Of a DNA stretch of 64,000 nt, positions 1 through 19,900 are shown piece after piece (the stretch's first letter is position 1; every line of letters begins with the position of its first letter). The notes under the pieces are model-generated. The model saw only the letters and a list, made by a program, of their open reading frames with translations. It did no database searches and had not been told where the DNA came from. Source of the stretch: Oculina patagonica (Eukaryota); the NCBI RefSeq assembly GCF_052425735.1, contig NC_135764.1, positions 3,658,001 through 3,722,000 on the forward strand, written 5' to 3'. Both the position numbers and the translations under genes were made by a program.

Positions 1-146
1 AAAATTGTACATGTACATGCCTTTTTGTCCACAAGATTGTTTACTAAAGCTACACATTCTATAATGTCAACAGTTTACTTGTCAGTTATATTCTCTGAGA
101 GACGATTTTAATAAATGCGGTTTCTTGCCACTGATGTCTGTTTTTT

Positions 147-245
147 TCACTAGCCATTTTGGCTAGTGAAAGGCCAAAACCTACTAGCCAAACCTGCATA
201 TTTACTAGCCTTTGGCTAGTTGGCTACCGTTAGTCTCAAGCCCTG
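147..245 (-). mobile_element. Partial copy of a CAGGGCT-terminated non-autonomous DNA transposon (same family as 893-1123)
   Basis: Ends in ...ggctaccgttagtctcaagccctg, the reverse complement of the left end of the element at 893; shares internal ctagcca repeats. Confidence 0.7.
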
Positions 246-249
246 CAGT

Positions 250-665
250 ACATGTGTACTGTTATCAACGGGGTCCTGCTGATAAAAATTAAAAATTACT
301 AAAATTACTAATTATATAATATACAATGAAAATTGTGTAAAAAGCGGATCATGCACTAAGTTAAAAACCTTAAAAAACTACAATTAAATATTAAAAGTAA
401 AAGTCATCCAACGCTTGAATCCTAAATAAAAGTCTAGAGTTAATGTTTCTTAAATTCAAAGGTAAAGAATTAAAAATCGAGGCACCTTTAAAATAAAAAC
501 TATGGCGCGCAAAATCAAGTTTGACTTTGGGCAGTTTTGCTGTTTTCCCGTTGTTTCTAGTGTTGGCGTTATAATGTAATCGTTCAAAGTAATTTTTAAA
601 CGGAGAACACACAGTTCCATTAAAACAATCAAAAACAAAAGAGCATGCTCTCTTTTATAAACAAG
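250..665 (-). mobile_element. 3' remnant of a CR1/L2-clade LINE (C-terminus of ORF2 plus 3' tail)
   Basis: ORF 391-612 reads H-Y-N-A-N-T-R...LPKVKLDFARHSFYFKGASIFNSLP, the typical H.y.TR...SF.y.g...wN.LP tail of CR1/L2 ORF2; frameshifted and truncated. Confidence 0.7.
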
Positions 666-892
666 TTTGCTTACTTTCCAGCAGTGGTTGCTTCACAGAT
701 AAAATCAAGGCCTAGGTGCCCAGATATTTGGGGAGGAACCTGAACTAGAGGGAGTGAGAACTCTATGGAAAGTCACAAGTGGGGGGAAGAAATGTTGGGA
801 AGTGGGAGAAATCTGGAAAACTTTAACAACATTTTTCAACTAATTCCAGTGTTGTTGAATTTCCCTCAATATTTTGTAATAGAGAAAGTACC

Positions 893-925
<33 letters not shown>

Positions 926-1123
926 AAGGCTACTAAAATTTAGGTTTTGGCTACCAGGTTTAGCATTCCTACTAGCCATTTGGCTAGTGAAAAACTCGGA
1001 AAAGTCAACTGTTCTTGATAGAAATCAATGTACCTGACTAGTGAAAAATTACTTTTGGCTAGTAAAATCTGACATGTCACTAGCCAGTAAACCAGTGAGT
1101 TAAAAAGTTAGTCTCAAGCCATG
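893..1123. mobile_element. hAT-like MITE with 5-bp target duplication
   Basis: Terminal inverted repeats cagggctcgagactaac / gttagtctcaagccatg; flanked on both sides by GTACC. Confidence 0.75.
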
Positions 1124-1361
1124 GTACCAAAGGGTGGGAACCAACAAGGAAGGGGAGGGAACTGGGAGTAAAAGGTATTAGAAGAGGGCAGTTCAGCCCC
1201 CCTTGCCCCTTCCGACACATATTGATGTCCCCACTAGGCATTGACTGTTATCCTTGTTCTTTTTTTATCAACCATCATTTTGAGGTTTCTTTGTATTTGG
1301 AGATAATTTTCTATAGTTGAAAGAAAGTCAGAATTTCTGATAACAGGTTTCTCTTTTGCAG

Positions 1362-4300
1362 AATGCAAGATGTAATTCACAGGTTATCCAAGGTGAGGCA
1401 CCTTTGTGATATCATTCTGACTTCTAATTTATTTAAATTATCCGTAGTATAAACAAAGTGCATTTTAGTTCCCTTCCACCTTCAAAACCCTAGACTGTTC
1501 ACAGCCTATCTATTTTTCATCCCTCTCTGCCACCCCCCACCCCACCCTTTTGCGCCTCCTGTTTTGCACTGGTGTCCAGTTCTCTTGCGATTCTTTTCCA
1601 CAGTCTAATTTGCACAGTCTAATTAAACCCACCAACCCAACCCATTCAACATTCAGCTCAATGTTGAGCATCTGACTGTATATGCAAGGAATCACAAGAA
1701 ATGGATAAAGCTATTAAAAGGTAATTTTATTGTTTGTAGCTCCTCAAGCCAGGTGGACTGATTCTATTCAGAGACTATGGTCGATTTGACATGGCACAGC
1801 TCAGATTTAAGAAAGGTTAGCCTTGCTGTTATTTTAGATTTAGCCTTTCTCCTTCATTTTATGAACGTCTCTGTTTTCATTTTTAATCAGCAAGGGTAGC
1901 AAATTCGTGTTTCCATTTATTGCTGTCGTAGGTTGTTGTTAATGCTTATGCCAGGTCTTCTTCATTTGCTTCAACCTTAGTTGCTAACGTCTCTCCTCAT
2001 CTTTCTAGTTGCATCATTTCTTGCTCTGCGACTGAACACTGCGAGCATCTCTTTCCTCAAACAGGAGTTTTCTAATTGACACCCCACACACCGAAAAAAG
2101 TTATTTAATATGGGCCAAGCTGGGTGCAAAAAAGCAATGGACTAATCAGAACTCGAAGTCAATCATGCAACGTGCCAAGCGCGGGAAAAACGCGCGTAAA
2201 CCTCAACTTGATCATTTTATTGTGCTGCTGATTGGTTAAACACACATCACGTCTGCGGCTTTCATTGATTGCAACGCAGTGCACGAATTAAGTACGGTGC
2301 TAAGAACCAAGTACGAACTATCAATGGAGCTCAGGAAACGAAAATCGAACGAAAACCCAAAGCAAATACAAAACAATTGTGTCTCAATTCGTGAAAATTG
2401 CTCAAAGACACGTTATCGCATCTTGCTTTGTTCTTCTTCTGATTTTTTTTGTTGGTTTATCCAGGCCTGTCATTTTAGTCCGGGTATCCTTCTCATGCGG
2501 CACCGGTGGTTGAAAATACAAACAAAACTCTACTTATGGCCACCTTTTCTACAACGGCCAGGTTAACGTTTTACTCTTATTGAAATTTCCGTACAAAGGT
2601 CAGTTAATTCTGTCTCATGTGAGCTGTTAAACAGATTTTTTAATAATCTCTAGTTTTTTCGCCCTCTACAATCTTCTTGCGCTAGTCTGTGCAATACATG
2701 AATACTCACGGGACTCAAGTCTTATTTTTCTCATACGTGCTACTGTTCTCCGGCAAATGTAGGAAATGTCCCATTTTGAAATAACGATGAAGTGACATGA
2801 AGGGACGTGTCGCAAGGGAATGTCGCAGCGACATGTGCAGGGACAAAATCTCAACATCTACACATACAAGAAAATGTTGACAAGGGACACGTTGCAGCGG
2901 CATGTTCCTTATAAAGTATCAGCGCACTCGAGGGGTCGTGCCGCTGGAACATGCCCCCGTTGCTACATTTTCTTGTGTTCGTTTTCTAGTGCCTCTCCAA
3001 TACGATGGATCATATTGGAAAGGCATGTCGCAGCAACATGTGCCCGCACCAAATGGGGGGATAAGTAGTTACGAGGTAGCAGGGACATGGTGCAGTGCCA
3101 CGTCTCCTTGTGATAATGATACTGCTTTTACGCTCATGCAAAGCACGTGAGTTTGTTCCCGTGACATTTCAATTGATGATGGATGTTGCTGGGACATGGC
3201 ACTTCAACATGACCCTTCGTGTGCGGGCACCTGAGAGCCTTATGTCGTTTAACTAAACGACAGCAACCTGGAAATTCTCAAATTTCTCCTTCCGCGCTTC
3301 TCTCATCCTTCGCGCTCCACCCGGGATTGCATAGTAGAGCATTTTACTCTTAACGGCATACCTGCTACCTTGTGTTCCCTGCAGCGCGATTTTTAAAACT
3401 TTTCGACGGAATCGCCTCGCAAGACGTTTGTTCGTATGTCCTTGCATCCTTAAGCTTTTCACTTCCTATTAAACGGGCTCCTTTCATTTTTCAAATACTA
3501 ATTACAAACCATTGTTGGATTTCTTACGATCTAAGGCTTTTTTTTATTCAGCTTCTCGAAGTTTTGTTAAAAATCGTTGCCACGATTGTCCTTTTAATAA
3601 ATAAGTAACTTTTATCTTCTCACTTTCCCAGGGAAATGTTTATTAGACAATTTCTACGTGCGTGGTGATGGGACAAGAGTGTACTTCTTCACACAAGGTA
3701 GAGTAGATATAGAGGTTTTTTGTAACTGCAACTCAGCAAAATGTGTAGCTTCTTTGTTTCAAGGCCGTTAATCAAGAAATTTGCCGTTTCTTAGAAGATT
3801 GAGTGAGCCCGGGTAAGCTCGTTTTAAATACCATGACAACGAGGTTGAGCCTACGGTTGACGTTTCTTGGTGACACGCGGGCAGAGGATTATCAAACATT
3901 CTCGTGCCACTTGCTGATTGGACAGTATTCATGGGGTACACCTACATATGAGCTATACCGTATGTGGCATGGAGACGGATTTTGAAATTCTTGGTTTGAG
4001 ATGATGTAGTCGTCGCAGTTTCACTCTCGAAATGTTCAATGAAGTTTCGCGCGATTTAGTGGTTTTGTATTACACAAAGAAAAAGGTCATTTTCTGTCCG
4101 GGGCAGGGCAGGGTAAAAATAAATTTTTAGCCTGAAATAGAGGGGCTTAGGGGGTACTCTGTGAGCAGTTGGTTTCTCCTATGCCAAACGTTGCGCTACG
4201 TGCACTTCGGTGTAGGAGAAACAACTACTCATAGACCTCATAGGAAAGGCTTAGAGATGGTGGGTACCAGGGCTAAATAGTTCAATGCAAGATTAACCTA

Positions 4301-7300
4301 GTTTGCCAAATTCATCCTTGGCTACTGAGCTAAAATAGGGCGTAAAGCGCTTTCAAGAAAAAAGAGGATGTAAGATCTATGATAGCTTACAATCTCAGAT
4401 TAACATAAATCTGCTTTCATGGGCTTTCGAACACTGAACTTGCATTCCGTTACACTCCTACTGTGGAATTCCCTTCTCCTCGGGCTTTCGCAAAAATCTT
4501 TCCGGCCTTTTATGGTAAAAGGATGTTTTTCCGTTTCAAAACACATACTGTTCTCTGGACTTGTGTGATCGGTCAAAAGTTAAGAATGAAATAATACGCT
4601 TAGTCTTAATGATGGAATTATATTAACTTCCCTTCCTTTTAATCGCCGGCTCTCTTCGCGGAGAGGGTTTAAACGACCCCAGGAGCTGACTAAAATTCAA
4701 GCCATTTGTGTAAAAGCAATATTATCGTCGCTGGTAAAAGAATTAAAGAAGTATGCGAAAGTTTATAGTTAAGCGCATTTCCAATTCTAAAAAATTCCGC
4801 GGACGTGCAAGAAACTTCCTTTTTAGCGATGTGTTATGATTAATGACCTTTTGTGTTCAAAAATTAGAAAATATCCCGATTATTATATAAAATAAAATAT
4901 TATATTATAATATTATAAAATATTATATTAGCTTGCCTTCCTTTCAATCGCCGGCTCTCATTGCGGAGAGGGCTTAAACGACCCCAGGAGCCGAATAAAA
5001 TTCAGGCCATTTGTGTAAAAGTAATATTATCGGCAAAGAATTAAAGAAGTATGCGAAAGTCTATAGTTAAGCGCATTCCAAATTCTAAAAAATTCCGCGG
5101 ACGTGCAAGAAACTTCCTTTTTAGGGATGTGTAATGATTAATGACCTTCTTTGTGTTCAAAAATTAGAAAATATCCCGATTTAAACTAATTTACAAACTT
5201 GAAAAGCTACATTTTTTAAAAGCATGTAACTAGTACAAGGAGAATTCAACCGAACTCTATAAACATAGATGTTTATTGGAGAGAAACACGACCCTCGTGT
5301 GAAGAAAACATGTTTTTCAGAACTTGTTTACTTCAAGTTGGTGTTATCTGGTTTCCGTACGTGCTGGCAAACAGTACAGCAACCTGTTACACAACCGATA
5401 TTGTTGGGCGAAACGGAAATGGGGCATTATGTTTGAAAACAAAGATTTCAGATCAAGAACATTTGACACTGATTTGACATTTGCTTTTCCGCCACACTCG
5501 TACGTGACTGTTTGGTAATGCTGCAATTAAGATAAGTGGAAAAACAACTCTGTAGGTGTGGCGCAGAACTTTCTTTTGACCTCCAACAATGAAAATTCGA
5601 TTAGTGCATTTTAAGGGGCTGTTTGTACGGTCAAGCCTTCGTTAACAAGATGAAAAAGTTATATTTTTGTGAGAAAACGCAGTGCTATACAGTTGCAATG
5701 TATTTTTGTTGGTTTACCCGATCATGTGACCAATCAAAACCAAGCTCTGAGGCGAATTAATTGCACGTGTAGATGTTGGCTCTGTGATTGGCTAAGACGT
5801 CTGGAAATCCAATGGAAAGTTCAATGATTGACAACGCGGGCACGATGAGATTTGTTGTGGTATTTTTGTATTTAATATTCGTGTTCAAAACTTTCAAATA
5901 CAACAAGTTCAGTAATATTAGTTCTCTACAATCCTCTTCTATAATCTTGCTTGACGAATCTGGCGACAAATGAAGCCACTTTTTCTCAAAAGAAGAAAAA
6001 ACTACAACTACCAATAATTTTAATGAAATCCAGGCCTTTAGTTGCAGTGTTCTTTTCGGCTAGCTTATCTTGTATTTGCCGATCCCAACAAATATTGCAG
6101 CTTTAGAAATGGAAAAAGAAATTACCGTCTTATTTCTGTCAGGCTGGAATGAGAAATTAAAAGAGGGTTAACGATATTTTTGTAGCATGAGAAATTGCGA
6201 TCAGTTTTCCAATGTTAAATTAAATTGTTTTCAAGTTTACAAAGTTAGTTTAGCAGTAACAATAAATGAAACACTTGAATGCTCTCACAACATTTATCTT
6301 TCCAGACTTTGAAGGGCTTGCTTCATTTCACAATATCCGAAATATGTAAACAGGGCTGCCCACAAAAATGCAAAACTGCTTAGACGCTGGAGATCTTTGT
6401 CAAGAGATTTTCAAGTCTATCTAGCGTTGAATAATTGATTTTAGAGATTAAAAATCCGAAATGTTTGCAATTCGTGCTCGAATGAACGTCTCGCTTGCGG
6501 TTGATTAAACCTTTTGTTACAAGCACTGTCTGTGATTTCTTTACAGTCCGCTAACGTTGTCAGTAGTTGGCGTTTAAAACCTTATGATAATAGACCGTGG
6601 GTGGAATGAATTTTCGCTGCTAATTAAGGCTACCTTTCAGTAAACGCTTCGCTTGCTTTTTAATTGAACGAAAGGAATTTATTTTTCCAAGGGATGTTGG
6701 CAAGAAGTGAGACCTTATAGTTTTGTAAGTTGACCGATTTAATCTTGATTTTTCATCTTATCCGGATCGGATGATCTCGAATTTTTCCTTTCAGTTTATT
6801 TGCAACTTTGCGGCTGAATTTCCGCACGTTTTAAGTACTTTGAAAATTCCCAGAATTTCTTGTTCCTGTTTACACCGTTCAGGTCGTCTTCGTCAGCAGT
6901 TTTAAAGCAAACTTTAATCTCCGCGAACAAACAGAGCATTGAGACGAACAATGGTGGCATTCTATGTGCAGGTTACTTCATTGGCGAAGGCTGTAAGAAC
7001 ATTAAATTCAGCAGGTGTCGAAAAATAACTTTAAAAAACTCCCGGACATGTCAGGTTAATTTCACGATTACTTCTGCCGTCAAGATTCAGGATTGTTGCC
7101 GTCCCTACGTGATGCTATTTGGCTGATTCATGGCTTAAAGACCCCCTTTAATAATAAGATATTGTATAAGGTTAAATGTTGAATACATTTCGCTGCTAAT
7201 TGGCAGGTTTCTCGAGATAAAATGAAAGCTTTATTGTGTTTTTGATTACCGCACCATCCGTTTGTTCAGCAATCTTATTGATGTTTGTCTGTGTAATCTC

Positions 7301-10300
7301 AGAGCAACTATTCTTTCCCAGTCGTGGGAAGTGAATGTTTTTCTTCGAATTGCTTTCTATAAGTAGGCTATAAAAAGAATCGGAGCTCTCAAGTTTAACC
7401 GCTGTCTCGTAACAGCAGGGAAACCAATTACAAGAGATTGATTGATTCTGACGGTCGCCTGCCCGCGAAGACAAATACATTTCCCAATGGCTAGAGGGGT
7501 TATTATTAGCAGCCCTTTGGAGCGACAGGTTGACGGACGATTCTGATTGGCTGGCTTCGAGACTTAAAATGCCATCATGTCAAAAGAACCTGTTATGAGC
7601 GTACGAAGCTATGGCCTTTATCAAAGACCTTTTCAGGATGCAAGACTTTGCTTTTGTGCGCCACTATCAAAACACATCGCGGTTTATCATGTCACATCTT
7701 TAGCTTCGGTGGCGAATTTTTTACGCCATTCGTTAGATTTTCGCTGATCTTGTTCTTAATAACATGCATTGCTCATTTTTGCTCCGTTAATCGCCAGCAT
7801 TTTCCTTTCTCGTTGGGACATTTCATCACTAATGGTATTCGTTGCTTTGATTAGATTACTTAAACAGGTTGTCTCGGTTGTTATTTATATTGTCTCTCCC
7901 GGGGGGGGGGGGGGGGGAAGGGACGAGATTTAAAAGTGCGCAACAGTTTTCGCTAGTAGACAAATTTCAATTTTTTGATAGCCCGGTTCGTTGCGTTCTT
8001 AAACGAAAAGCGATAACGGTGGGCTTTTATGGACAGAAAGGCATCACTGTTTTCAAGTAGACTGCAGTCCAGGTGTTTTTAAACGAGTTTCCTTAATTCC
8101 GAGATAACTTTCATGCAACAGGTGTTTAGCGCAGTCAAATATCTTCACTGCGATTAACGCGGCACCTTTGTGTGAAATGGCGGCACAAGATTACAGACCT
8201 CACTTTGAATAAAATCTTTATTTAGAAACCATCTCTTTGTACAGTCTACCTGTTTGTCAATATAAATTATAGAATAATAAAACTACTCTGTAATAGCTTT
8301 TATCGATACGAGCCGGGTTTCGGTTTCGAATTTCCTGTTACAGTTCTTCGCGAACTTTCTGCGTAATTAAGCCCTTTAAATTCCTTGGCGAAGTGAATTG
8401 TTGGTTTAGTTGTTATGGTAAAATACTCAGTTGTATCCTCGTTTTTTTGTCTAGCTCTTCTGATAGTTTATCTGTCTTTCTATACTCAAATGTTTTTATC
8501 TTTTTGAGACCAGCTACGCTAAGCTACCGGGTCCAAATTTTGAACGACTATTGTTGACTTATGTTTCAACAAAAACATCAATCGGGAAAAACACCTTAAT
8601 CACAGCAACTGTGATTTTTTTTCTATCGGTGTGCGGTAAGCCTTTTTAGCTTATGACAAGCAGAAGTTACGCTTCGTTTGCGAATCGAAAGCTCTGGAAA
8701 TAGAGTGAATCAGTTTTTGTGAGTCAAGTGCCGTTTCCAGGGCATCCGCTGTCTTCATGCTTCAGTAAAAGCGACATTCTCGAAAAAGATTTCGAGCAAA
8801 GGCTGCAACAGTACTTCTTGACGTCGGAGTGTGTCTGCAAGTGCGCGCGGAGGTTTGATCTGTCGGCGAAGGCTCGCTGGCAGTTTGGGCATTTGTACGG
8901 TTTCTCTCCGGTGTGGGTGCGAATATGTCCTTGAAGTAACCAGGGCCTACTGAACGCCTTACCGCAGATTTTGCACTTGCACGGCAATGTGTGTGTGCGG
9001 ATGTGCATTTTAAGTGCCCCTAGCGACACGTAAAGTTTGTCGCAGTATTTGCAGTGAAACGGGCGCTTGTGATGAGGCTGACAGTGGTATTGCTGGTGTC
9101 GGAGAAGCGATGTGAGGGAAGAGTAATTCTTACTGCACTCTTGACATTGGTAGTTACTTCGCGCTGTTTGCCCTGCGGCAATCTCATTGCCGTTTTCATC
9201 GAGGTTTCTTATGCCAGGTTGTTTTTCCTGAGATTCCGCGACAACGCTCTTTGGAGCTTCTCTTAGCACGGTAAAGCTCGATACTTCGGCTGGATAGGTG
9301 AAAAGTCTCTTTTCCCAGCCGATTTCCGCGGGCATCTGTAGCATTCCCACTCTCTTGATGTGCGGGGTAGCATGTTGAAAATCCTGAATATAACCTGTTG
9401 CGTGTGCAGAAAAACACATGGTATAAATCAGATATTTGGTTTACAAATTTAGCCTGCTGTTAGCAACGCTCGCCAGCGCTCAAAAATTCAGCAAATGAGC
9501 ACGCCTCACAAGCGACCAGCGAAATGACTTCGGGAAAGCGAACAGAAATTGCGAAACCTGCGAGCGAGCGTTCGCTCGAAGTGAAGAATTCTTTTGCGCT
9601 TGCTACCTGCCCGATATCTATGACAAGTGCATCGGGGTAAATACAATAGATTATTCCACTTACCGCTTCCCGGGCTAGCAATGATCACATTCGAAGGCAG
9701 TTTCTTGAGCTTTTCGGTCTTCTTCTTGACCAGAAATGCTTTCGGCATTTTTCGCAGGGCAAGTTAGCTATAGTTGTCAGAGAGCACTTCGCTGGCTGTT
9801 GTTGTGAGTTCAGAACGTGTTCCGCTCAACGTACAGTTGGGCAGTTGTGAGGGCGACTCTACTCGTCTCCGCTTCAGCCGCATTTATTGGCTGATTCACC
9901 GTGACGTCATCTGTCAGGTGTAACACATTATTATAACTCCTTGGTGTGAAGCAGCGCCCGGGGGGCAGTCGTACCGTATTTGGAAACCCGGGTAAAAACC
10001 CCATTAAGTTCACACCCTGTGCTTCAGCGAGTCAATAAAAGGCGTAATTAACTTGAAGCATGCGTTGCGTCTCGCCCTTCCTTCGATTTGAAGTAGTTCA
10101 AACCAAAGGAAATTCCAAGGTCGTTAGAAAAGATTTAAGCCTCACAGCAAATCTGCTCTTGTTTGAACTGAGGAGCAAAAAACAACAGGTGACGGGAGTT
10201 CATTACCATTGTTCAGCCATTGTTATGATTCGAAAGTCAATACAAGGGTATAATTAACTAACTCGAACAATAACACCTCAATACATGTCGCGGTGCAAAT

Positions 10301-13300
10301 CAAAATCAAACAGTATCGTCGATAAACTCGCTTCAGGCAAAAATTTGCATTTCAGCCGCGTAATAACAAAAGTTAATGATGCTATCCGGCCAAGCGCTTG
10401 TTTAACCGGCATGAGCGGTGAATAAATCTGTTATCAAAACTCTTCTGGTTTCCATTCCCGGCTGATTAGATATTCTGGCGGTGTAGGTTTTCCTTGGCAA
10501 GGGACAAATTTTGCTCTCTGTAAACCTTAGCAGGTGACTCAATAATGAGACTCAATCAATAATATCGCGTCGCTTAAAAAAAATATCTTAAGGCCAAGAT
10601 TACAGAGACTTGTGGTGTGAATATTACATTTCGACATCGCAAGTTCACCATAACAACATTCCAAGGTTAATTTGTTGAAACGAAATGATCATTTCGTGAA
10701 CTCTCTTAGCAACAAACAACCTGTTTTTAAAGGAATTTTTGAATTACCAAGGAGAAAGCGTCTCTTTGAAAGAAGCTATCCATCTTAATCTCATTTCCGA
10801 ACAACAATTGCCTAACGGTTGGGTTTATAGGTCTTTATAATCTTAACTTTCACCGGACGTCGATGGAGAATCGTTCATACTTTTAATCCAGGCTTTTTGT
10901 CGCAGGATTACGTGGAAAATCAGCGGAATCAAGGCTGTTTTTTCCTTGTTGATATTCTTAGAACAATGAAAGGAATTTTATTTGCAATCTACTTATATTG
11001 TGGACGTTGTTGGAGATAAGAACCTGTCGTTTCTATAATGGAAAAAATGTTGCTTGCTCTTCAGCGGGTAACTCGATCCGAAATTCCAGCGAAATTATTT
11101 GGACCTGCCCCACTTTTCTTTTTATAGAATTTATGTCCGTATTTAAAGTGTTTTATTTTTTATGTGGGAATAGTATTTCTTGGCTCAAGTCCCATTCCCA
11201 AGGCTAAAAAATTTTGGGAGAGCAAAGTGCGCGTGAGAATTTGTAAGACTGAAGTTGTTTTTGTCACGTTTGTCGCTCAATTTTCCTGTTCAACGTCTTT
11301 CCCGTCAATGACCACGAAGTTCATTTCAATATTTCTTCCTTGGTATTTTTCTCTGCGAAGTTTCAAGCGTTTAAACTGAAAATTGAAATGATAAACAGTT
11401 TGTTTTTAAAGGCAAACTTGGTCAGTTCGGAAGAAGTGCGAGTTGTTTGTCCCTAAAAAGTGAAATGGTTTCTTCGGCTTGTGATCGGAGTGCTTGTGTT
11501 TTGTCCATGCGTTTTGTGTACATGAAAAAATGAATAATGAATAAAATGGTATCCGGATTTACAAGATTACAAAATAGTGAAATGAGAAGTGGTGTGGTGA
11601 GCTTGAATTATAATCGGCTGTATCGAAAAAAAAATCGCGCCCGCCGGGGAGACTCGTCAATTTCTAGGGCACAGCGGAAATAAATGACCGAAGTGACCTA
11701 ACAGGCAACCATCACGGCTGTTTAGCTACGATAAAAGCTCTTATTTCATTCAATACAACAGAAGTTAATTCTTCAAATGATCAGTCAGCTGAAATGAGTG
11801 ATGAATATTAGTGATGATTCTTTATGAAGGGTTTGAAGGCTTCAGGAATTAGCACTAGGGCGTTGCTAAGATATTTGCAATTCGCTTTTGAAACTGAAGG
11901 AAGTCATAACGAGTCTTTTGAGAGCTGATTCCTTTTAATCTAGTTGCCCTTTTTACGCCGAATTAATTGGATGAAAAGATTCCAGAATTAGCCATGACGG
12001 CAGGGCAATAGTTCTTCCTTTATTCATCGGACGTGCTTCGACAGTCTTTTCGAGACAAAAATGTTTTCTTTACATGTAATGACTTCCTATTTCCCTTTTT
12101 GTGTATGGACAAACAATCAATTTGTGAACATGACGCTATGCATTCAACCAAGGGTGCCCCTGCTTGTTTTTAGACGCAAGTGTAATCTTTTGTTTTCAGA
12201 TAGCAAGGTTATTTTCCTTTGTAAAACAATCGAAACACAATCAACGCTATTTGCGACCTGCTCTACGGACTATAAAATCAAAAACACCTAATTTCACGTG
12301 ATTTTGTGATGAGATCAAATTAATTTTAAATTATGATGAAATACTTCGCCTCTTGGAACATTTCTCGCATGGTTTCTCAGTCACTAGGTTTTAAACGATT
12401 TTAAAAAAGTTATTAATTTATCCGGCTTCAGTTGTAAACGCCACTTTTGAATACCAGGTGTCTCAAGCAGCGTGAACGCTGCCGAAAAAATGCGCCGCGT
12501 TCGTGCATGAGGGCGTCTTATTGTGTTTTCTCCATTTTGTAAAAAGAAGAAAAGGCTCTCGCAGGCAGCGAGTCGCTTGGGTTTTTAAAAAAATAACAAT
12601 TAATTGTCTTAGCAGCAAACATAACTAAACTTGCTGTACGCTTTTTAGCGTTGTGTATCTCAAAACTAAACTGTCGCCGTTTGTTAAGTTGGTCAAAAAG
12701 CGTGCTTGTTACTATTAAATACGAAGGGAAACGAATTTAATTGACCTTCGTCAGGGATGAGCATTTTGATGGAATGAAAAAAAAAATGATTACCCGACTG
12801 CTTATTGAGGACTTTGACCAAAAATTTAAATCTTGTGATTGAAATGTCCCCACGAGGAAAAAAAATTAAATGGAATAAAAACATCAATCCGGCATAATGA
12901 GCCTGCTGTGCGATTATCCTTAGCATCAAACATGGCAAGCTCTCTGTCTATTGTTACAGAGAAAAAAAAGCAACGCTTTGACCTGCTTTAAAATGGGTCA
13001 CATTTAATACTTTGTTGTGGTTTCTTACGTTGCCTACTGTTCGTGGTATGATGTTTGGCATACTAGTCATTTTGGCAGTCTCCGTGAGTCATTTTTGCCT
13101 GTTGTATTGATTTCTTTCTTTTGCTTTTCCTGTTTTGAAGAGAATCCGTTTGTTTTCATGTAAAATTAAATTTGGAACCGTCCCCACTTTTCGTATATTT
13201 GCCTCATTGATTGATCTATCTCTTGCGTCAGTGATTGTCTGGTTCAGTTTGCTTTTTAGACTATATCTGGCAAAAAATAGATGTATTGCTGGCGTACTTG

Positions 13301-15912
13301 TGTGCCAAATTGCTTCTAAAAGACTCTTCTATTCTCTGTTACATGGCTTATCTTAATACTGCTGAAACCTTAAATGAAAGTGAAAAATGTAGGGGAGAAA
13401 TGAAATGTGGGGAAACCTTAGAAGAGTCGGTGTGGTGTGGTCAAAATGGAGGCAAAATTGAAGAGGACTGTTAAAAGTGCATTGTAGACATAACTTGATT
13501 TTTGTTTCGGTTCGGCAGAATTTATTTAAAAACGCGCATAAACTGCTCAGAAATGCTCTTTGCTTACATAGATGAAATAGAGTCATTAAAAAGCATCAAC
13601 AACAATAACCTCGCCAAGTTCAAAAGGCAAAACTAATTAATTGCCTTCTTGAAGAAAAATACTATTTATACTCATAAATGACACTACATGTAGCTAATTT
13701 CCGTCTAGTGACCTCGTAGATCTGTCGGTGGAATGCCTTTTGTCACCACTGAACTCTTTTAGGTATTAAAATACCCAGAAGTGACGGATATAGATTTTCT
13801 CCTTACAACATCGATTGTCAAGCATAGAAGTGTAGAGAATAAAGAAATGCGTCAATTAGGGATATAGACAACAAGACCAGTTCGTGTTCTTTCCGCTATT
13901 TTTAAAAGAGGCGCGAATTACAGCATGTGAGAATCCCGGGGTGAGAAATCCCTATAAAACTTTCATTCGCGAAGTGTTTGCTGCAAAACGTTCATTTCTA
14001 AAATATCCACCGCCTGTAAGATATCTCGCATAAGATTTCACTCAGCAAATTTAAGGGATCTAGATTGCTTGCACACCCTCCTTTCTCTTAAAATGCAACA
14101 AGTGTTTATCCCACGAACGCGAACGCGGGGGGGGGGGGGGGAATGGAGGTGAGATGTTTCTCTCCTCGTGTGCGTCCTAGCGCGCCGCAAATAGCCCCCC
14201 CCCCCTTCTGTTCCTTCTCCCAAACGTCCTTTTGTGCTGCAACGAGACAAATTCAAGAGAGAAAAGAACTGCAAGCAATCTAGAGGGATCTAGCTTTTGT
14301 CAAGTAAAAGCCGAGTAAAAGACCAGCTGAGAAATTCTAGGGAATTAGTTCGATCATGCCGAGTCCCATACCAACATTTCGCCTCGCAACATGATTGCAA
14401 CCTCATATGTTACGTATACCGAGAAAAAAATCGGTGAATGGCATTGCAAGAACTAACATTTAAAGAAAAGTGTTCAATTTAGCTGTCAGTAAGATTTAAT
14501 TTCCAGCTTGTGACTAAGAGATTAAAAAAAATTTCAACGCACTTGTGATTAACGTTTTTTTAATCGTTTTGGTATTTATGTTGAATTGAGCACTTTCAAT
14601 CACTTTCGTTTTACTGTGGAAAATTGTAAATAGCAGTTAATCTGTCATGAGAATTCTGTGGCGGTGACAAAAAAAGTTAATTTCCTTTCCATGGGGCGAA
14701 AACAGCATTTTTTTTTCATGAACTTGGCTCATACGATAAGACATCGGTTCCTTGGCCATTTATGTAATTGTCATAGGCTAATTATGTTCTCTCTTGCAAA
14801 AGAAATTTGTCTAATGTCGGGATATTTTTAGTCGGTTTTAACGAAAATAACAACCCTAAAAGGAGCCCAGTAATGAAGGCCACACCTGTTAATCAGCTGC
14901 CTGTCAATCAGTTTAAGTTTTTGCGTGGAAGGTAGCATTAACATAGCCTGCAGACGAACAAAACCCCGGTATAGTCCGTCTATACCGGGGTCTTGTTCAT
15001 TTGCAACGCAGGCTAGCATTAAGATTTAACACTGATACAAGCGGGAAAGTCGAGGAAAGAGAAAGTTGTTGTTAAGCAAGTGATTTCAGAATTGCTATTT
15101 CCATTTCCTTTAAACGAATCTTAGTGTTTTCATAACGTACAATGAACAGAAGAAACTCCTTGCCTTGTTACTTGCTTAAGTTTTTGACGCCTTTCCTCCA
15201 TCTTTAAGTTGGTTTCTAAGCCAATCAAAAGTAAAATAACCACACGTTGACATCTCCATCACCCAGTTTTAACTTGGATTTTGAAGTGAATGAAAACCCT
15301 TCTTTGACTAGCAACCATAAGCACGGCGTGTACCAAGCCCGAAAAACCCTTAGAGCCCAAGCGCAGCCTAATCTTGTTCCCACGGCCTTCGCTCCCTCTA
15401 TCGTTGACCAGTAGGACCGAAGGCTCAGGAAAGCGCGTTTCTGACACGGATCTGTTTGTGACATACCCTGGTTCTAAAGGTTTTCTCTAATATGCCATTT
15501 CCGAGTTACCCTTTGCCTCTGTTTCAAAACGAGTCTACGTGCGTAACCATTCAAATGAAAATGATCTTCACCGACACGTCGATTTTCATGCAAATCAAAC
15601 TCACACGTAGACTCGTTTTAAAACAGGGGCAAAGGGTAACTCGGAAATATCTATATTTCTAAAACAAATTTGAACCGCGACGGCAATTCGCTTTAGTAGA
15701 AGAAAGAAAACGTCTGGGACTAGGGCATTTGTGACATCCAATTCTAATTATGTGTTGTTGGTTTTTTTTTAGACGACCTTTCCCAGATGTTCCAAGAGGC
15801 CGGGCTTGTTGAAGAACAGAACTACGTTGACCGCAGACTGCAAGTGAATCGCGGGCGTCAGCTGAAAATGTATCGTATCTGGATTCAGTGCAAGTATCGA
15901 AAACAAAGATGA
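1362..15912 (+). CDS. METTL2: tRNA N3-methylcytidine methyltransferase METTL2, 3' part; exons 1362-1392, 1740-1815, 3632-3697, 15773-15912 (5' exons lie upstream of the window)
   Basis: All exons are bounded by AG/GT and phase-compatible. Spliced translation: [103 protein letters not shown]. This closely matches the METTL2 C-terminus. AATAAA at ~15930 and ~16005. Confidence 0.95.
2790..3233. repeat. Degenerate interspersed DNA element rich in GGGACA/TGTCGC motifs
   Basis: Many short internal gggaca/catgt repeats and a terminal cccttcgtgtgcgggcacct; no credible ORF. Confidence 0.5.
4628..5181 (+). repeat. Direct tandem duplication of ~250 bp (4628-4881 and 4932-5181) with a ~50-bp pure A/T spacer
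   Basis: Both units run from ...aatcgccggctctc... to ...aaattagaaaatatcccgatt with few substitutions and one small indel. Confidence 0.9.
8724..9748 (-). CDS. snail: Snail-family C2H2 zinc-finger transcriptional repressor, 251 aa; exons 9748-9664 and 9394-8724
   Basis: N-terminal SNAG motif MPKAFLVKK. Phase-1 intron G|gtaagt...caacag|GT of 269 bp. Five zinc fingers including [52 protein letters not shown]...[16 protein letters not shown], diagnostic of Snail/Slug. Minus-strand AATAAA at 8217-8222. Confidence 0.97.
9880..9925 (-). promoter_or_regulatory. Putative snail proximal promoter elements: CCAAT box, CRE (TGACGTCA 9902-9909), Snail-type E-box (CAGGTG 9915-9920)
   Basis: Motifs are clustered 130-180 bp upstream of the snail ATG; function is inferred from motif identity only. 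Confidence 0.45.
14061..14282. mobile_element. Small MITE (TAGATTGCTTGCA...TGCAAGCAATCTA)
   Basis: 13-bp perfect terminal inverted repeat; flanks aagggatc / gagggatc resemble a target duplication. Confidence 0.7.
14944..15015. mobile_element. Miniature palindromic element TAGCCTGC...GCAGGCTA with 9-bp TSD
   Basis: Hairpin-forming; flanks gcattaaca / gcattaaga. Confidence 0.7.
15490..15655. mobile_element. MITE with long terminal inverted repeats
   Basis: atttccgagttaccctttgcctctgtttcaaaacgagtct ... agactcgttttaaaacaggggcaaagggtaactcggaaat. Confidence 0.75.
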
Positions 15913-16027
15913 CGAAAACGTTTATAGTGAATAAAAATGTTGACGGTTTGATTTTAATGCATTTGTCTGTTCATTTATTGTACTTCTTTATTGTTCTTCG
16001 AGAGAATAAAACAATGCCGTTAGCCCC

Positions 16028-16090
16028 AAAACAATAGCAACTGCTACACTAGAGGACCAGTATTATAACAAGCTTAAAAGAGCTGCTACA
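16028..16090. repeat. Short dispersed repeat, second copy at 18109-18171
   Basis: aaaacaatagcaactgctacactagagga...agctgctaca is present at both loci. Confidence 0.7.
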
Positions 16091-16958
16091 CTCGTGTAGG
16101 TAGGAGGGTAGGGGATTGGGCATAGCAAAGTGACCAATGAGCACAGACCTTCGAGAACTCGACTAGCAAAGACAAGTAAACTTTGTTCTTAATCAAATAC
16201 AGTTTATTATTTATTTTGTTGATAGCGCTCACCACTAACAGATTAATAACCATGTCCTCAATTTTACTAGTGAGCTTGATTTTCTAAAAGGAAACCTAAC
16301 ATTACTGGTTTAATATTGCAGAACAGTCGACCATTGTTCGATAAAGAAAAAAATTAATTTAAGATTCCAGTAAATTTCATATTCAGTTTTTCAAATTATT
16401 AAATGGCTTTGCAATTTTCCCCCTCCACTTTGTTCTTGACAAATCTTAAACTGAAAGAGGTTAAGAATAAAAAGGTTTGTACTAGAAGAACAGAGCCTGG
16501 GTTTAATGATTATCACTTAGCTTTTGAAAAATTGAGCTCAGTACTCAACAAATGACAGCAATCCATTAGGAAAGTGATGGAGAGGACAAAAATGGACTTT
16601 AATAAGAAAAAATGAGAAAGTGAGGTTCATGTTTGGCATGGATTCTCTTCACACAGTTTGAAGATCTGTCAAATCTATAAATCCCCCCTTCGAAACATTG
16701 CTTTCTATCATTGAGTTCCTTTTTTACATTTTTTTTAATTTCATCAGTAGGAAGAATACTTCCAGTATTTAATATTTTTTGGGGGCCGACAGTGTTTGTT
16801 CACCTAGAATAGATCATAATATGAATCCAACAGGCATTTTTCCAGTACTTGTTGATAAGTAACATGCTTGAATGTTGCATCATGGTGGTTAAAACTAATT
16901 TGGTCAAGCCCTGTCGTTTGTTCTGCAGTAGTTTGGAGAAGGAAGGCCAAGCCTGCCA

Positions 16959-19900
16959 CTAATCTTCACTTTCCTCGTTGCTAAATCTCGTATGTTTTGG
17001 GTGTTTTGTCTTTATTTCTGAGGCCTGTAAAAATAAAAAAATTGAAAAAAAAAAAAACACAGAGGGAGTAAGCAAGAACTTCACACAATCTTCACAACAC
17101 TTCAATACATTTCAGTGGCATTTGCCACGATACATGTATGTTTAGTATCATGTATCTGATTGTTGCCATTGATCACCTTATTATTTATCAAGGTCCTAAT
17201 AATGCCCAGAAGTTGCAACCCTCCATAAGTAGTAAACGAATGAGGCTACTAAATCCGAAAGTAATGATCCTTGTTACTTGCAGAACTTTATGGTAGCAAG
17301 AAAACTGAATTAAACCATATGCTTTAATGCTAAACAATAACACTTGAGGGGGTTTAGGATTCCAGGGTATAAATGGTCCAAGAGAAAAGAAACAACACTT
17401 TTGTCTGTGCTACTAGAGAAAGGAGCAAAGCATGGGGCTCGCAGGGTTTCTGTTTGCTTCTGAGGGTCCTTTAACTTTGCAGTGAAATATGGACAAATTG
17501 GCAAGTTAAAAATGTTAGGAGTGTGGGAAAGGCCTAAAGGGCAGATAAGAGTGGAAGGGCAGGAAAATACAGCTGTTAGAGTTGCACAGTAGCTGTGTTC
17601 TTGATGAAGTGAAAAAAAAAAAAAAAAAAAAACTAGGATTAACTTACATAGCCAGGAAACTCATAGTCAATGCCAAGATCTTTCATCTTTTTTCTCTTCT
17701 TTTGTTCTTTTCTGAGAATATTTTTGACTTGTTTTTGATGTTCCTCGTCAGTCTTTGTCTGAAACAGACGGAAAGAAAGGTGATAAACACAATCATTATA
17801 GCACCAGAGTAATGAAGATGTGATTTTCAAAAAAACCTGTGATGCAGGGTTGAACTTGCGACTACAGACAACAAATCCAGCAAGTTACCAGGAATCTCCA
17901 TATGTGGGTCAGGTAGTAGCCTGCGGGCGCGCATTTCCGGCCGTGCTTCTCTTCTCTTCTATTTTTCGGCGGAGAGAAGCGACGGCCGGAAATGCGTCTG
18001 CTCTCGCAGGCTAGTCAGGTAGCAGCTCTCGCAAGGTCGCACATGAATGGCTTGCTACCCTTTGAGAGAACAATAGAACAAACAACAGGAACAATGCCCC
18101 AAGTCCGCAAAACAATAGCAACTGCTACACTAGAGGAACAGTAGAATTACAAGCTGACGAGAGCTGCTACATCCTAAACAACTCAGCCATGCTGACAAGT
18201 GTCCTATCATCAAATTCTTCTAACTTAAACTATAAAAAATGTATGGAGACCAATAAGTAAAATTTGTGTGTTGACAAGTCGATCAAATATGAAACAAAGG
18301 TGCTGTCAATTTAAACTTGACTCCAATACATCTTACTTTGTATTGATCTTTTATTACAGGGCCGTGGGCAAGATTTTGCATGGGTGGGTGCAAGCACCAG
18401 AGGCGTGAACCTCTCTTTTGTGGCGTGTGGGTGGACTGCTGATGCACCTATTGCACCCTCCTGCCTATGGCCCTGTTTCAACAAGACATTTGAGGGTAAT
18501 CACCATTCTCTTTGTTTTGTTGACTATCAGTACTCACCTTATTTTGCTTTTTGATTTCATTTTTCTGTCGGGGTATAAAACGAAATTTTCTGTTTGATCC
18601 TTTCCATAGCCTTGGATGAACTCTATCATTAGGGATTACTTTGCCTGTAAAAATGGAAAATGGCAGAAATTTAGATTCAATAGTAAAGCCTTAAACGTAC
18701 CTGGCTCATCTCAGAGCTACACTTTGATTTCTGTAGCATGAAGCAGCCGGGAGTATTTCTACTCCCCCTGCTGGATGTGATGCTAGTCCATCGCAGGGTT
18801 ACCTCCCCAGCATTATGTCAGGTTGCCTCAACAATTCGTCGGTACCCATTCATATTCCTGGGTGGAGAGACGCACTGTGGGAGTGAAGTGCCCAAGAACA
18901 CAACACAATGGACATCAGAAATAGGCCCTTTTGTAAACTGAAGGCCCTGTAAATGAACATTAAAATGCGATCTTAAGAATTTCAGGCTCCTTAGTGTGAC
19001 TACATGTATACTCACATTTTAATAATCTTCCAAACATCATGTAATTATGCATAGTTTCTGCTACAATTTTGGCGACTTCATCACAGGCAAACTCCACAAA
19101 GGCATAGCCTTTTGATCTTGCAGTCTGTGTAGTAGAAATAAAGAAACAAATTAATAACCTGACAAAAAATTTAAATCTCAAGATAAAAATAATCACTACC
19201 AATTACCAATTTTACCAAAAAATGTCTGTCTTTTCACAGTCAAGTAAATAAAATTCGAAATACAGGTGCACATCACATCATGGACCAAAACACAGGAAAG
19301 AAATGCAAAACACCATGATCATAAAATATACATGTACATGCTTTATAAGATATTCCTGCATTGGACTTTTGACACCCATAACAACATTAAAAGTACTATA
19401 AAATGGTATACAGTAAAAACCCGCATATAAGAACCTAACATTTAAGAACCTGTTAGGCTAAAATTTCATTTTTAAGCACCCTTCATAAGACCATTTTAGG
19501 CTAAAATTCTAAAACAGGTTCTTTTTTCAAAATAAGAGATAAATACTAATTCCAATCCTCTGTCAGTGGACATTTTTAAAGAGGAACTTTGACATTTTAT
19601 CATGTTATGTTATTTTGTTTACAAGATTTATTGGGAATTATAGTGAAGGTTACAGTATAGGTTTGATTTTAACAGAATCAGATTAAAATAGTATATATTT
19701 TGCTTACCGAAGCCTCCAAGAATACTTTATTGGACATTAAAGACCAGATCATTTAAAAATTCTACTTTATTTCTTGAACAAAAGTTAAGAACCTAATTAA
19801 GAACCTGGTTGCCTATTTTACATATACATTTTATAGAACTGTTTAGGCTACTTGAAAAACCTAGGTTCTTATACGCGGGTTTTTACTGTATAGTCGACTC

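What the first reader, a model, noticed from the sequence alone, without database searches (positions are those of the whole stretch)
3698..15772. Snail is nested antisense inside the 12-kb last intron of METTL2
Seen: METTL2 exon 3632-3697 (…RVYFFTQ G|gt) can only be completed by exon 15773-15912 (ag|AC GAC…VDRRLQVNR…). The 12,075-bp intron between them therefore contains the whole snail gene on the opposite strand. The other visible METTL2 introns are 0.35 and 1.8 kb. Inference: a developmental regulator locked inside a housekeeping bystander gene, a genomic-regulatory-block-like arrangement with possible transcriptional interference during gastrulation.
Basis: seen in the sequence. Interest (0 to 1): 0.7.

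Follow-up and report, generated by a model that had tools for sequence, protein, structure and literature searches.

The report
Snail gene nested inside METTL2 intron
In this stony-coral genome the gastrulation regulator snail does lie backwards inside the last intron of the tRNA methyltransferase gene METTL2; the arrangement is shared with other stony corals and, flipped, with a sea anemone, but it is an ordinary old nested-gene pair with no evidence of a regulatory tie.

Summary
METTL2 exon 3632-3697 joins only to exon 15773-15912. That terminal exon is unique in the 529-Mb assembly. The 12,075-bp intron holds a complete two-exon snail gene on the minus strand (CDS 9748-8724, 251 aa).

An RNA-type contig of the same or a very close species starts the last exon exactly at the predicted acceptor. 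A contig from another coral joins the two exons directly.

The same antisense nesting occurs in Pocillopora damicornis, Porites harrisoni and an unnamed coral assembly. A fourth coral's RNA-seq contig links snail antisense to the penultimate METTL2 exon. In Nematostella the orthologous snail (SnailB by elimination) sits in the same last intron, but in sense orientation. An octocoral and a scyphozoan METTL2 carry no snail.

The nesting therefore most likely arose once before sea anemones and stony corals split, and snail was later inverted within the intron.

Noncoding sequence shared by all three coral genomes is confined to snail's own transcription unit and about 430 bp of promoter. That fits a self-contained guest gene better than a genomic regulatory block. 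Transcriptional interference was not tested.

The genome's second snail paralogue is likewise nested antisense in a STRIP intron, and sense in Exaiptasia. I found no paper describing either nesting.

The parts
1362..1392 (+). METTL2 coding exon (..[10 protein letters not shown])
   Evidence: ag/gt borders and frame. Matches named coral METTL2 proteins.
1740..1815 (+). METTL2 coding exon ([26 protein letters not shown])
   Evidence: Alignable at DNA level with three coral genomes.
3632..3697 (+). METTL2 penultimate coding exon ([22 protein letters not shown]), donor gt at 3698
   Evidence: Conserved in three coral genomes.
3698..15772 (+). METTL2 last intron, 12,075 bp, holding the whole snail gene
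   Evidence: The equivalent last intron is about 12.3 kb in Pocillopora, 13.9 kb in Porites, 15.3 kb in L006 and 6.2 kb in Nematostella.
15773..15912 (+). METTL2 last coding exon (stop TGA at 15910-15912). The 3'UTR continues at least to 15924; AATAAA lies at 15930-15935.
   Evidence: Unique in the genome. X1 spliced contig matches 15771-15924. L007 shows the direct join.
9664..9836 (-). snail exon 1: 5'UTR from about 9836, ATG at 9748, SNAG motif [10 protein letters not shown], donor gt at 9663-9662
   Evidence: The 5' end is taken from the spliced mRNA contig L025 of a related coral.
9395..9663 (-). snail intron (phase 1, just after the SNAG region)
   Evidence: Removed in contigs L024 and L025. 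The C10 paralogue has an intron of the same phase at the same position.
7217..9394 (-). snail exon 2: CDS to the stop at 8726-8724 (five C2H2 fingers), then a 3'UTR of about 1.5 kb, if the 3' end of the relative's mRNA applies here
   Evidence: The 3' extent comes from L025, which ends at about 7217 after AATAAA at 7235-7230.
9837..10272 (-). snail proximal promoter, conserved in three coral genomes (TGACGTCA at 9909-9902, CCAAT at 9890-9886)
10273..12580 (-). upstream region alignable only with Pocillopora at 65-71% identity; possible distal snail regulatory sequence
7137..7227 (-). 91-nt noncoding block at or just beyond the snail mRNA 3' end, conserved in all coral sequences compared
   Evidence: No stable fold (z = 0.04). 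No Rfam match.

Best explanation
This is a real host-guest (nested) gene pair.

Shown:
- METTL2, the tRNA m3C methyltransferase orthologue, has 11 coding exons and spans about 23.5 kb. It starts 7.6 kb before the window.
- It is completed by splicing 3697 to 15773.
- A complete snail gene lies on the opposite strand near the middle of that intron. By comparison with a relative's mRNA it has its own promoter, one intron and a long 3'UTR.

Inferred:
- The nesting arose once in the hexacorallian stem, before sea anemones and stony corals separated.
- It persisted mainly for a passive reason. Any rearrangement that removes the guest needs both breakpoints inside one intron of a presumably needed housekeeping gene.
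- An inversion confined to the intron is harmless, and one such inversion explains sense orientation in Nematostella versus antisense in all corals sampled.
- Snail is probably driven by its own nearby sequences (about 7.0-12.6 kb of the window), not by elements scattered through METTL2.
For: Structure: exon borders and frame. The upstream exons map on L005. The terminal exon is unique in the genome.

Splicing: the X1 contig starts the last exon at the acceptor, with 547 upstream letters that lie nowhere in 10150-15770 and no joint inside that stretch. L007 joins the two exons directly.

Guest gene: snail identity. Spliced snail mRNA contig of a relative covering 9836-7217.

Conservation:
- Antisense nesting in the last intron in L006, Pocillopora with NCBI gene models and Porites harrisoni.
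- RNA-seq contig L024 links snail to the reverse complement of the penultimate exon.
- Nematostella has snail in the same last intron, same strand.
- All METTL2-nested snails fall in one clade, support 97/90, apart from the SnailA/Exaiptasia clade.
- The octocoral last intron is about 220 bp and the scyphozoan one 4.3 kb; neither holds snail.

Self-containment: noncoding conservation shared by all three coral genomes is limited to 7137-7227 and 8722-10272.
Against: - The own-species splice evidence is one Logan contig whose 547 upstream letters I could not read. The run is only guessed to be RNA.
- The two poly(A) runs gave almost no reads on the exon.
- Snail's transcript ends are transferred from a relative with only about 79% DNA identity.
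- Nematostella P0038 sits on a long branch (1.04), so its place in the tree is less certain than the support values suggest.
- Only one anemone, one octocoral and one scyphozoan were examined for METTL2.
- Passive retention is an argument, not a measurement. Weakly conserved or relocated enhancers would escape blastn at these divergences.
Confidence: 0.78

Rival explanations
1. Genomic-regulatory-block reading. METTL2 is a bystander whose sequence carries enhancers that snail needs, and selection on those elements keeps the two genes together.
For: A trans-dev gene sits in an unusually long intron of a housekeeping gene: 12 kb against 0.35 and 1.8 kb. The nesting is kept in four coral genomes and in Nematostella. 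Noncoding blocks are alignable with Pocillopora up to about 2.7 kb upstream of snail. This matches the predictions listed for GRBs in PMC3514665.
Against: Blocks shared by three coral genomes hug snail's own transcript and proximal promoter. None lies in other METTL2 introns or in the outer 3 kb on either side of the host intron. Orientation is flipped between anemone and corals. The pair is absent from the octocoral and the scyphozoan and is on different contigs in three bilaterians. The pair is not mentioned in the main text of the metazoan microsynteny survey.
Confidence: 0.12
2. Functional antisense coupling. Transcription of METTL2 through snail, or of snail against METTL2, tunes one gene's output through polymerase collision or double-stranded RNA, for example around gastrulation.
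For: Antisense orientation holds in every stony coral examined. RNA-seq contig L024 of a relative is colinear with 10583-3670, with only the snail intron removed. So RNA, or contaminating DNA, from the whole stretch coexists with spliced snail mRNA.
Against: The orthologous pair is co-oriented in Nematostella, so antisense overlap is not an ancestral requirement. L024 comes from an unstranded assembly and may merge METTL2 pre-mRNA with snail mRNA. No stranded, staged or small-RNA data were laid on the snail stretch.
Confidence: 0.12
3. Artefact. The interval is misassembled, or the exon pairing is wrong and METTL2 ends elsewhere.
For: Only one own-species contig supports the acceptor, and no read spanning the whole 12 kb was available.
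Against: Four independent assemblies of other species (three corals and Nematostella) show the same host intron holding snail. Two spliced contigs support the join. The terminal exon is unique in the genome. The window has no N runs.
Confidence: 0.02

Closest known systems
Nematostella vectensis snail in METTL2 (locus L009, record OW051986.1). The snail is P0038; it is SnailB by elimination, because P0017 is SnailA and PMC4507178 reports only two snail genes.
   Same: Same host gene and same (last) intron. The guest is orthologous by tree (97/90) and also has two exons.
   Different: The guest is on the same strand as the host. The intron is about 6.2 kb rather than 12 kb. No noncoding DNA is alignable with the window.
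Pocillopora damicornis and Porites harrisoni METTL2/snail loci as annotated at NCBI (L008, L026)
   Same: Antisense guest of 251 or 254 aa in a last intron of 12.3 or 13.9 kb. The gene models already show the overlap.
   Different: Different species: the METTL2 tail is 93-94% identical and snail 79-83%. I found no paper that describes the arrangement.
Genomic regulatory blocks (trans-dev gene plus bystander gene; Irimia et al. 2012, PMC3514665)
   Same: A developmental transcription factor is physically tied to a housekeeping gene with a long intron, and the linkage is conserved.
   Different: No conserved noncoding elements were seen outside the guest's immediate surroundings. The linkage is limited to Hexacorallia, and orientation is free.
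Classic intronic nested genes, such as OMG/EVI2A/EVI2B antisense in an NF1 intron or Pcp in Drosophila Gart (from my own knowledge, not checked here)
   Same: A complete, independently transcribed gene on the opposite strand within one intron of an unrelated host.
   Different: Here the guest is a key gastrulation regulator, and its paralogue is nested in a second, unrelated host (STRIP).

Membership tests
Snail family zinc-finger transcription factors | N-terminal SNAG repression motif (MPRSFLVKK-like) | tested here: met
   [10 protein letters not shown] begins at the ATG at 9748.
Snail family zinc-finger transcription factors | Four to six C-terminal C2H2 fingers with the Snail-type signature ([18 protein letters not shown]) | tested here: met
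   Pfam zf-C2H2 E = 3.5e-27 with four scored stretches. Five fingers can be read in the translation.
Snail family zinc-finger transcription factors | Groups with named Snail proteins and not with Scratch | tested here: met
   Best named hits are Exaiptasia Sna and Nematostella SnailA and Snail. It lies inside the anthozoan snail clade, with the genome's Scratch-like copy as outgroup.
Snail family zinc-finger transcription factors | Expression in invaginating endoderm/mesoderm at gastrulation | not testable with these tools
   No developmental RNA of this species was available.
METTL2 (tRNA N3-methylcytidine methyltransferase) | Orthology to named METTL2 proteins over the whole length, including the C-terminal DRRLQVNR...WIQCKY motif | tested here: met
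   The 103-aa tail is 87-94% identical to Porites, Pocillopora, Montipora and Acropora METTL2. All upstream exons were found on L005. Named hits.
METTL2 (tRNA N3-methylcytidine methyltransferase) | Class I SAM-dependent methyltransferase domain | tested here: inconclusive
   Pfam domains were scored on the Pocillopora orthologue only. The window's own domain exons lie upstream of the window and were matched by tblastn, not scanned.
METTL2 (tRNA N3-methylcytidine methyltransferase) | m3C32 activity on tRNA | not testable with these tools
   Needs a biochemical assay.
Nested (host-guest) gene pair | Guest transcription unit entirely inside one host intron | tested here: met
   Snail spans about 7217-9836, inside intron 3698-15772.
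Nested (host-guest) gene pair | Host mRNA is spliced across the guest | tested here: met
   X1 contig and L007. The own-species evidence is indirect, because the upstream letters were not shown.
Nested (host-guest) gene pair | Guest is independently transcribed and spliced | tested here: met
   Spliced snail mRNA contigs L024 and L025. They come from a related coral, not from this species.
Genomic regulatory block | Conserved noncoding elements or enhancers for the target gene inside the bystander's introns, away from the target | tested here: not met
   Blocks shared by three genomes are confined to 7137-7227 and 8722-10272. Sensitivity is limited to what blastn can detect.
Genomic regulatory block | Linkage conserved across distant phyla | tested here: not met
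   Absent in Dendronephthya and Rhopilema. On different contigs in Ptychodera, Tubulanus and Dreissena.

The most novel reading that the evidence does not exclude
Both anthozoan snail paralogues sit in long introns of unrelated, constitutively expressed genes (METTL2 and STRIP). Both pairs survive from anemones to corals with orientation free. This may not be chance: the host intron could serve as a selected chromatin shelter, where steady host transcription or gene-body marks keep the compact snail module insulated or poised for rapid activation at gastrulation.
Probability: 0.1. Interest if true: 0.65.

Novelty: new member of a known kind. Interest (0 to 1): 0.36.

Why it matters
- It fixes the gene models. 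METTL2 is a 23.5-kb, 11-exon gene and snail is a separate two-exon gene. Automatic annotators could otherwise truncate METTL2.
- It adds a host-gene marker, consistent with the tree, for telling the two anthozoan snail paralogues apart: the SnailB type lies in METTL2 and the SnailA type in STRIP.
- It warns that edits or reporters at snail in Nematostella or corals lie inside an intron of another gene.
- Sense orientation in an anemone and antisense in corals offer a natural comparison for testing whether host transcription affects a nested developmental gene.
- Nested genes are common, and this scan has already noted others in this genome. The arrangement is useful but not surprising.

Tried and rejected
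- Read laying on 10150-16149. The two poly(A) raw-read runs (X23, X24) gave a depth of about 0.3 or less on the last exon and no junction reads. They carry no weight either way.
- The look-up of sequencing runs listed no holder on record as RNA.
- The look-up of encoding contigs had no record for Actinia (P0332), Acropora muricata (P0391) or Montipora (P0390) METTL2. Those taxa remain unchecked.
- The listing of cluster members gave no own-species spliced fragment. It only identified P0124 as Acropora digitifera METTL2.
- Rfam found no match in 1-17000.
- The conserved 91-nt block shows no fold beyond shuffled controls, so I rejected a hairpin or miRNA reading.
- Pfam N1221 (PF07923) found nothing in the genome search. 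DUF3402 (PF11882) and tblastx located STRIP instead.
- Literature searches for METTL2+snail+intron, snail+nested+intron+Nematostella and microsynteny+bystander+snail found no description of the arrangement. No supplementary files of Irimia et al. 2012 are held.
- An alternative homologous terminal exon between 3698 and the snail 3' end was looked for and not found. A non-homologous alternative last exon cannot be excluded without cDNA.

Full report
**1. What is in the sequence**

The window is G000:C7:3658001-3722000 of a 529-Mb, coral-like assembly. It has no N runs and is 38.6% G+C.

On the plus strand four exons with ag/gt borders lie at 1362-1392, 1740-1815, 3632-3697 and 15773-15912. Spliced, they give a 103-aa tail:

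...[57 protein letters not shown]|[46 protein letters not shown]

This tail is 87-94% identical to the ends of the Porites, Pocillopora, Montipora and Acropora proteins named METTL2 (names).

The remaining seven coding exons lie upstream of the window on L005, with the start codon 7,576 bases before the window. The gene therefore spans about 23.5 kb, and half of that is the last intron.

**2. Is 15773 the only way to finish METTL2?**

- tblastn with four coral METTL2 proteins finds one C-terminal exon in the window.
- A six-frame search of the whole assembly with that exon finds a single copy.
- Laying reads and contigs on 10150-16149 showed no joint inside that stretch.
- In run X1, a 726-nt contig of depth 61 has positions 548-701 matching 15771-15924 with one mismatch. 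Its first 547 letters lie nowhere in 10150-15770. The two extra matched bases are expected, because exon 3632-3697 also ends in AG.
- A Logan contig from another coral (L007) joins the counterpart of 3624-3697 directly to that of 15771-15918.

I could not read the 547 upstream letters of the X1 contig, and X1 is only guessed to be an RNA run. The own-species evidence is therefore good but indirect. The two poly(A) raw-read runs gave practically no coverage of the exon.

**3. The guest gene**

On the minus strand an ATG at 9748 opens [10 protein letters not shown], a SNAG motif.

- Exon 1 ends at 9664 with a gt donor.
- A phase-1 intron runs to 9395.
- Exon 2 carries five C2H2 fingers and stops at 8726-8724.
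- The product is 251 aa.

Pfam scores zf-C2H2 at E = 3.5e-27. The best named relatives are Exaiptasia Sna and the two Nematostella snail proteins.

Spliced mRNA contigs of a related coral (93% protein identity, about 79% DNA identity) cover the counterpart of 9836-9662 joined to 9395-7217. This suggests a transcript of about 2.3 kb with a 3'UTR of about 1.5 kb ending after the AATAAA at 7235-7230. A TGACGTCA and a CCAAT box lie at 9909-9902 and 9890-9886.

**4. Other genomes**

| Taxon (locus) | METTL2 last intron | Snail in it? | Orientation to host |
|---|---|---|---|
| This window | 12.1 kb | yes | antisense |
| Unnamed ENA coral assembly (L006) | about 15.3 kb | yes | antisense |
| Pocillopora damicornis (L008) | about 12.3 kb | yes, 251 aa | antisense |
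| Porites harrisoni (L026) | about 13.9 kb | yes, 254 aa | antisense |
| Nematostella vectensis (L009) | about 6.2 kb | yes, 272 aa (P0038) | sense |
| Dendronephthya gigantea, octocoral (L023) | about 220 bp; gene 2.9 kb | no | n/a |
| Rhopilema esculentum, scyphozoan (L022) | 4.3 kb | no | n/a |

- In Pocillopora and Porites the NCBI gene models already show the overlap.
- By the usual classification (my own knowledge), Pocillopora is a robust and Porites a complex coral, so both main stony-coral lineages are covered.
- A 6.5-kb RNA-seq contig of a fourth coral (L024) runs from upstream of snail, through spliced snail, to the reverse complement of the penultimate METTL2 exon.
- Nematostella has only two snail genes (PMC4507178) and P0017 is SnailA. 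P0038 is therefore SnailB.
- The Rhopilema METTL2 gene carries only transposon-type genes.
- In Ptychodera, Tubulanus and Dreissena the listed snail and METTL2 proteins lie on contigs of different lengths, hence on different contigs.

**5. One origin or several?**

In a maximum-likelihood tree of 41 snail proteins rooted on the genome's Scratch-like copy, all four METTL2-nested snails fall in one clade with support 97/90. This clade is separate from the one holding Nematostella SnailA and the Exaiptasia snail, which has support 100/97.

Nematostella SnailB is on a long branch, so the tree alone is not conclusive. The identical host intron is independent support. The simplest history is one nesting event before sea anemones and stony corals separated, followed by one inversion confined to the intron. 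By my recollection of published molecular clocks that split is several hundred million years old; I did not check this here.

**6. How it probably works**

Noncoding sequence alignable in all three coral genomes is limited to two stretches:

- 8722-10272, which is the snail CDS, intron, 5'UTR and about 430 bp of promoter.
- A 91-nt block at 7137-7227, at or just past the mRNA 3' end.

Pocillopora alone aligns further, from 7007 to about 12580. The outer roughly 3 kb on each side of the intron and the other METTL2 introns show no shared blocks. Parts of them are high-copy repeats.

This is what a self-contained guest gene looks like. It is not what a regulatory block with enhancers spread through a bystander looks like. 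The free orientation points the same way.

My preferred reading is passive retention. The guest cannot be separated from the host without two breakpoints in one intron of a presumably needed gene, whereas an inversion within the intron costs nothing.

Functional antisense interference is neither shown nor excluded. It cannot be an ancestral requirement, because the Nematostella pair is co-oriented.

**7. A second case in the same genome**

The other snail paralogue is at G000:C10:1941631-1942173, with its SNAG exon about 300 bp upstream. It has the same intron phase.

It lies antisense in a roughly 12-kb intron of the STRIP/FAM40 gene. The STRIP exons are colinear with Exaiptasia on both sides. 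In Exaiptasia the snail P0014 lies in the equivalent STRIP intron in sense orientation.

So both paralogues are nested in unrelated housekeeping hosts, and both are flipped between an anemone and this coral. This may be chance, since this scan has noted other nested genes in this genome. It is the basis of the more novel reading given separately.

**8. Novelty**

The gene models at NCBI already display the overlap in Pocillopora, Porites and Nematostella. Three full-text searches found no paper that describes it, and the main text of the metazoan microsynteny survey does not mention it.

I class it as a new member of a known kind: a conserved intronic nested gene. It is useful for annotation, for paralogue assignment and as a natural experiment, but it is not surprising.

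Noticed in passing
G000:C10:1929787-1958657 (outside the window; loci L018-L021): The genome's second snail paralogue (248 aa, MPRSFLVKKK, same phase-1 intron) lies antisense in a roughly 12-kb intron of the STRIP/FAM40 gene. In Exaiptasia (L011) snail P0014 lies in the equivalent STRIP intron, in sense orientation.
   Followed up: partly
G000:C4:21410567-21411001 (L014): A third SNAG zinc-finger gene (MPKSFLIKKGKEY...ALKSYLNKH) looks like Scratch. I used it as the outgroup of the snail tree.
   Followed up: partly
window 7137-7227 (minus strand): A 91-nt noncoding block at or just beyond the snail mRNA 3' end is conserved in Pocillopora, Porites, L006 and the L024 contig (86% identity with L006). 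It contains CTGCCAATTA and the imperfect palindrome AAATGTATTCAACATTT. It shows no stable fold and has no Rfam match. Its function is unknown.
   Followed up: partly
L024 (Logan contig of SRR6255880), equivalent to window 10583-3670: A 6.5-kb RNA-seq contig is colinear with the genome from 750 nt upstream of the snail start to the unspliced border of the penultimate METTL2 exon, with only the snail intron removed. It could be METTL2 pre-mRNA merged with snail mRNA by an unstranded assembler, a long read-through snail transcript, or DNA carry-over.
   Followed up: no
window 15486-15600, 14950-15150 and 16024-16062: High-copy repeats, with contig depths in the thousands and many loose ends. 15486-15600 is a short inverted repeat of the MITE type, lying just before the METTL2 acceptor.
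   Followed up: no
window about 2796-2980 (METTL2 intron 1816-3631): A repeat of about 180 bp has dozens of copies at 70-80% identity on many chromosomes. A second short repeat lies near window 1530-1600.
   Followed up: no
L005:3971-4369 (7.6-5.6 kb before the window): The fourth METTL2 coding exon is much longer here (133 aa) than in Pocillopora (83 aa) and aligns poorly at 31-38% identity. It is a lineage-variable insert in the N-terminal half of the protein.
   Followed up: no
L022 (Rhopilema esculentum METTL2 locus): The scyphozoan METTL2 gene hosts two transposon-type genes in an early intron: one THAP/DDE transposase and one YqaJ-type exonuclease. It holds no snail.
   Followed up: no
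window 7895-7918: A run of about 20 G residues lies within the presumed snail 3'UTR region.
   Followed up: no
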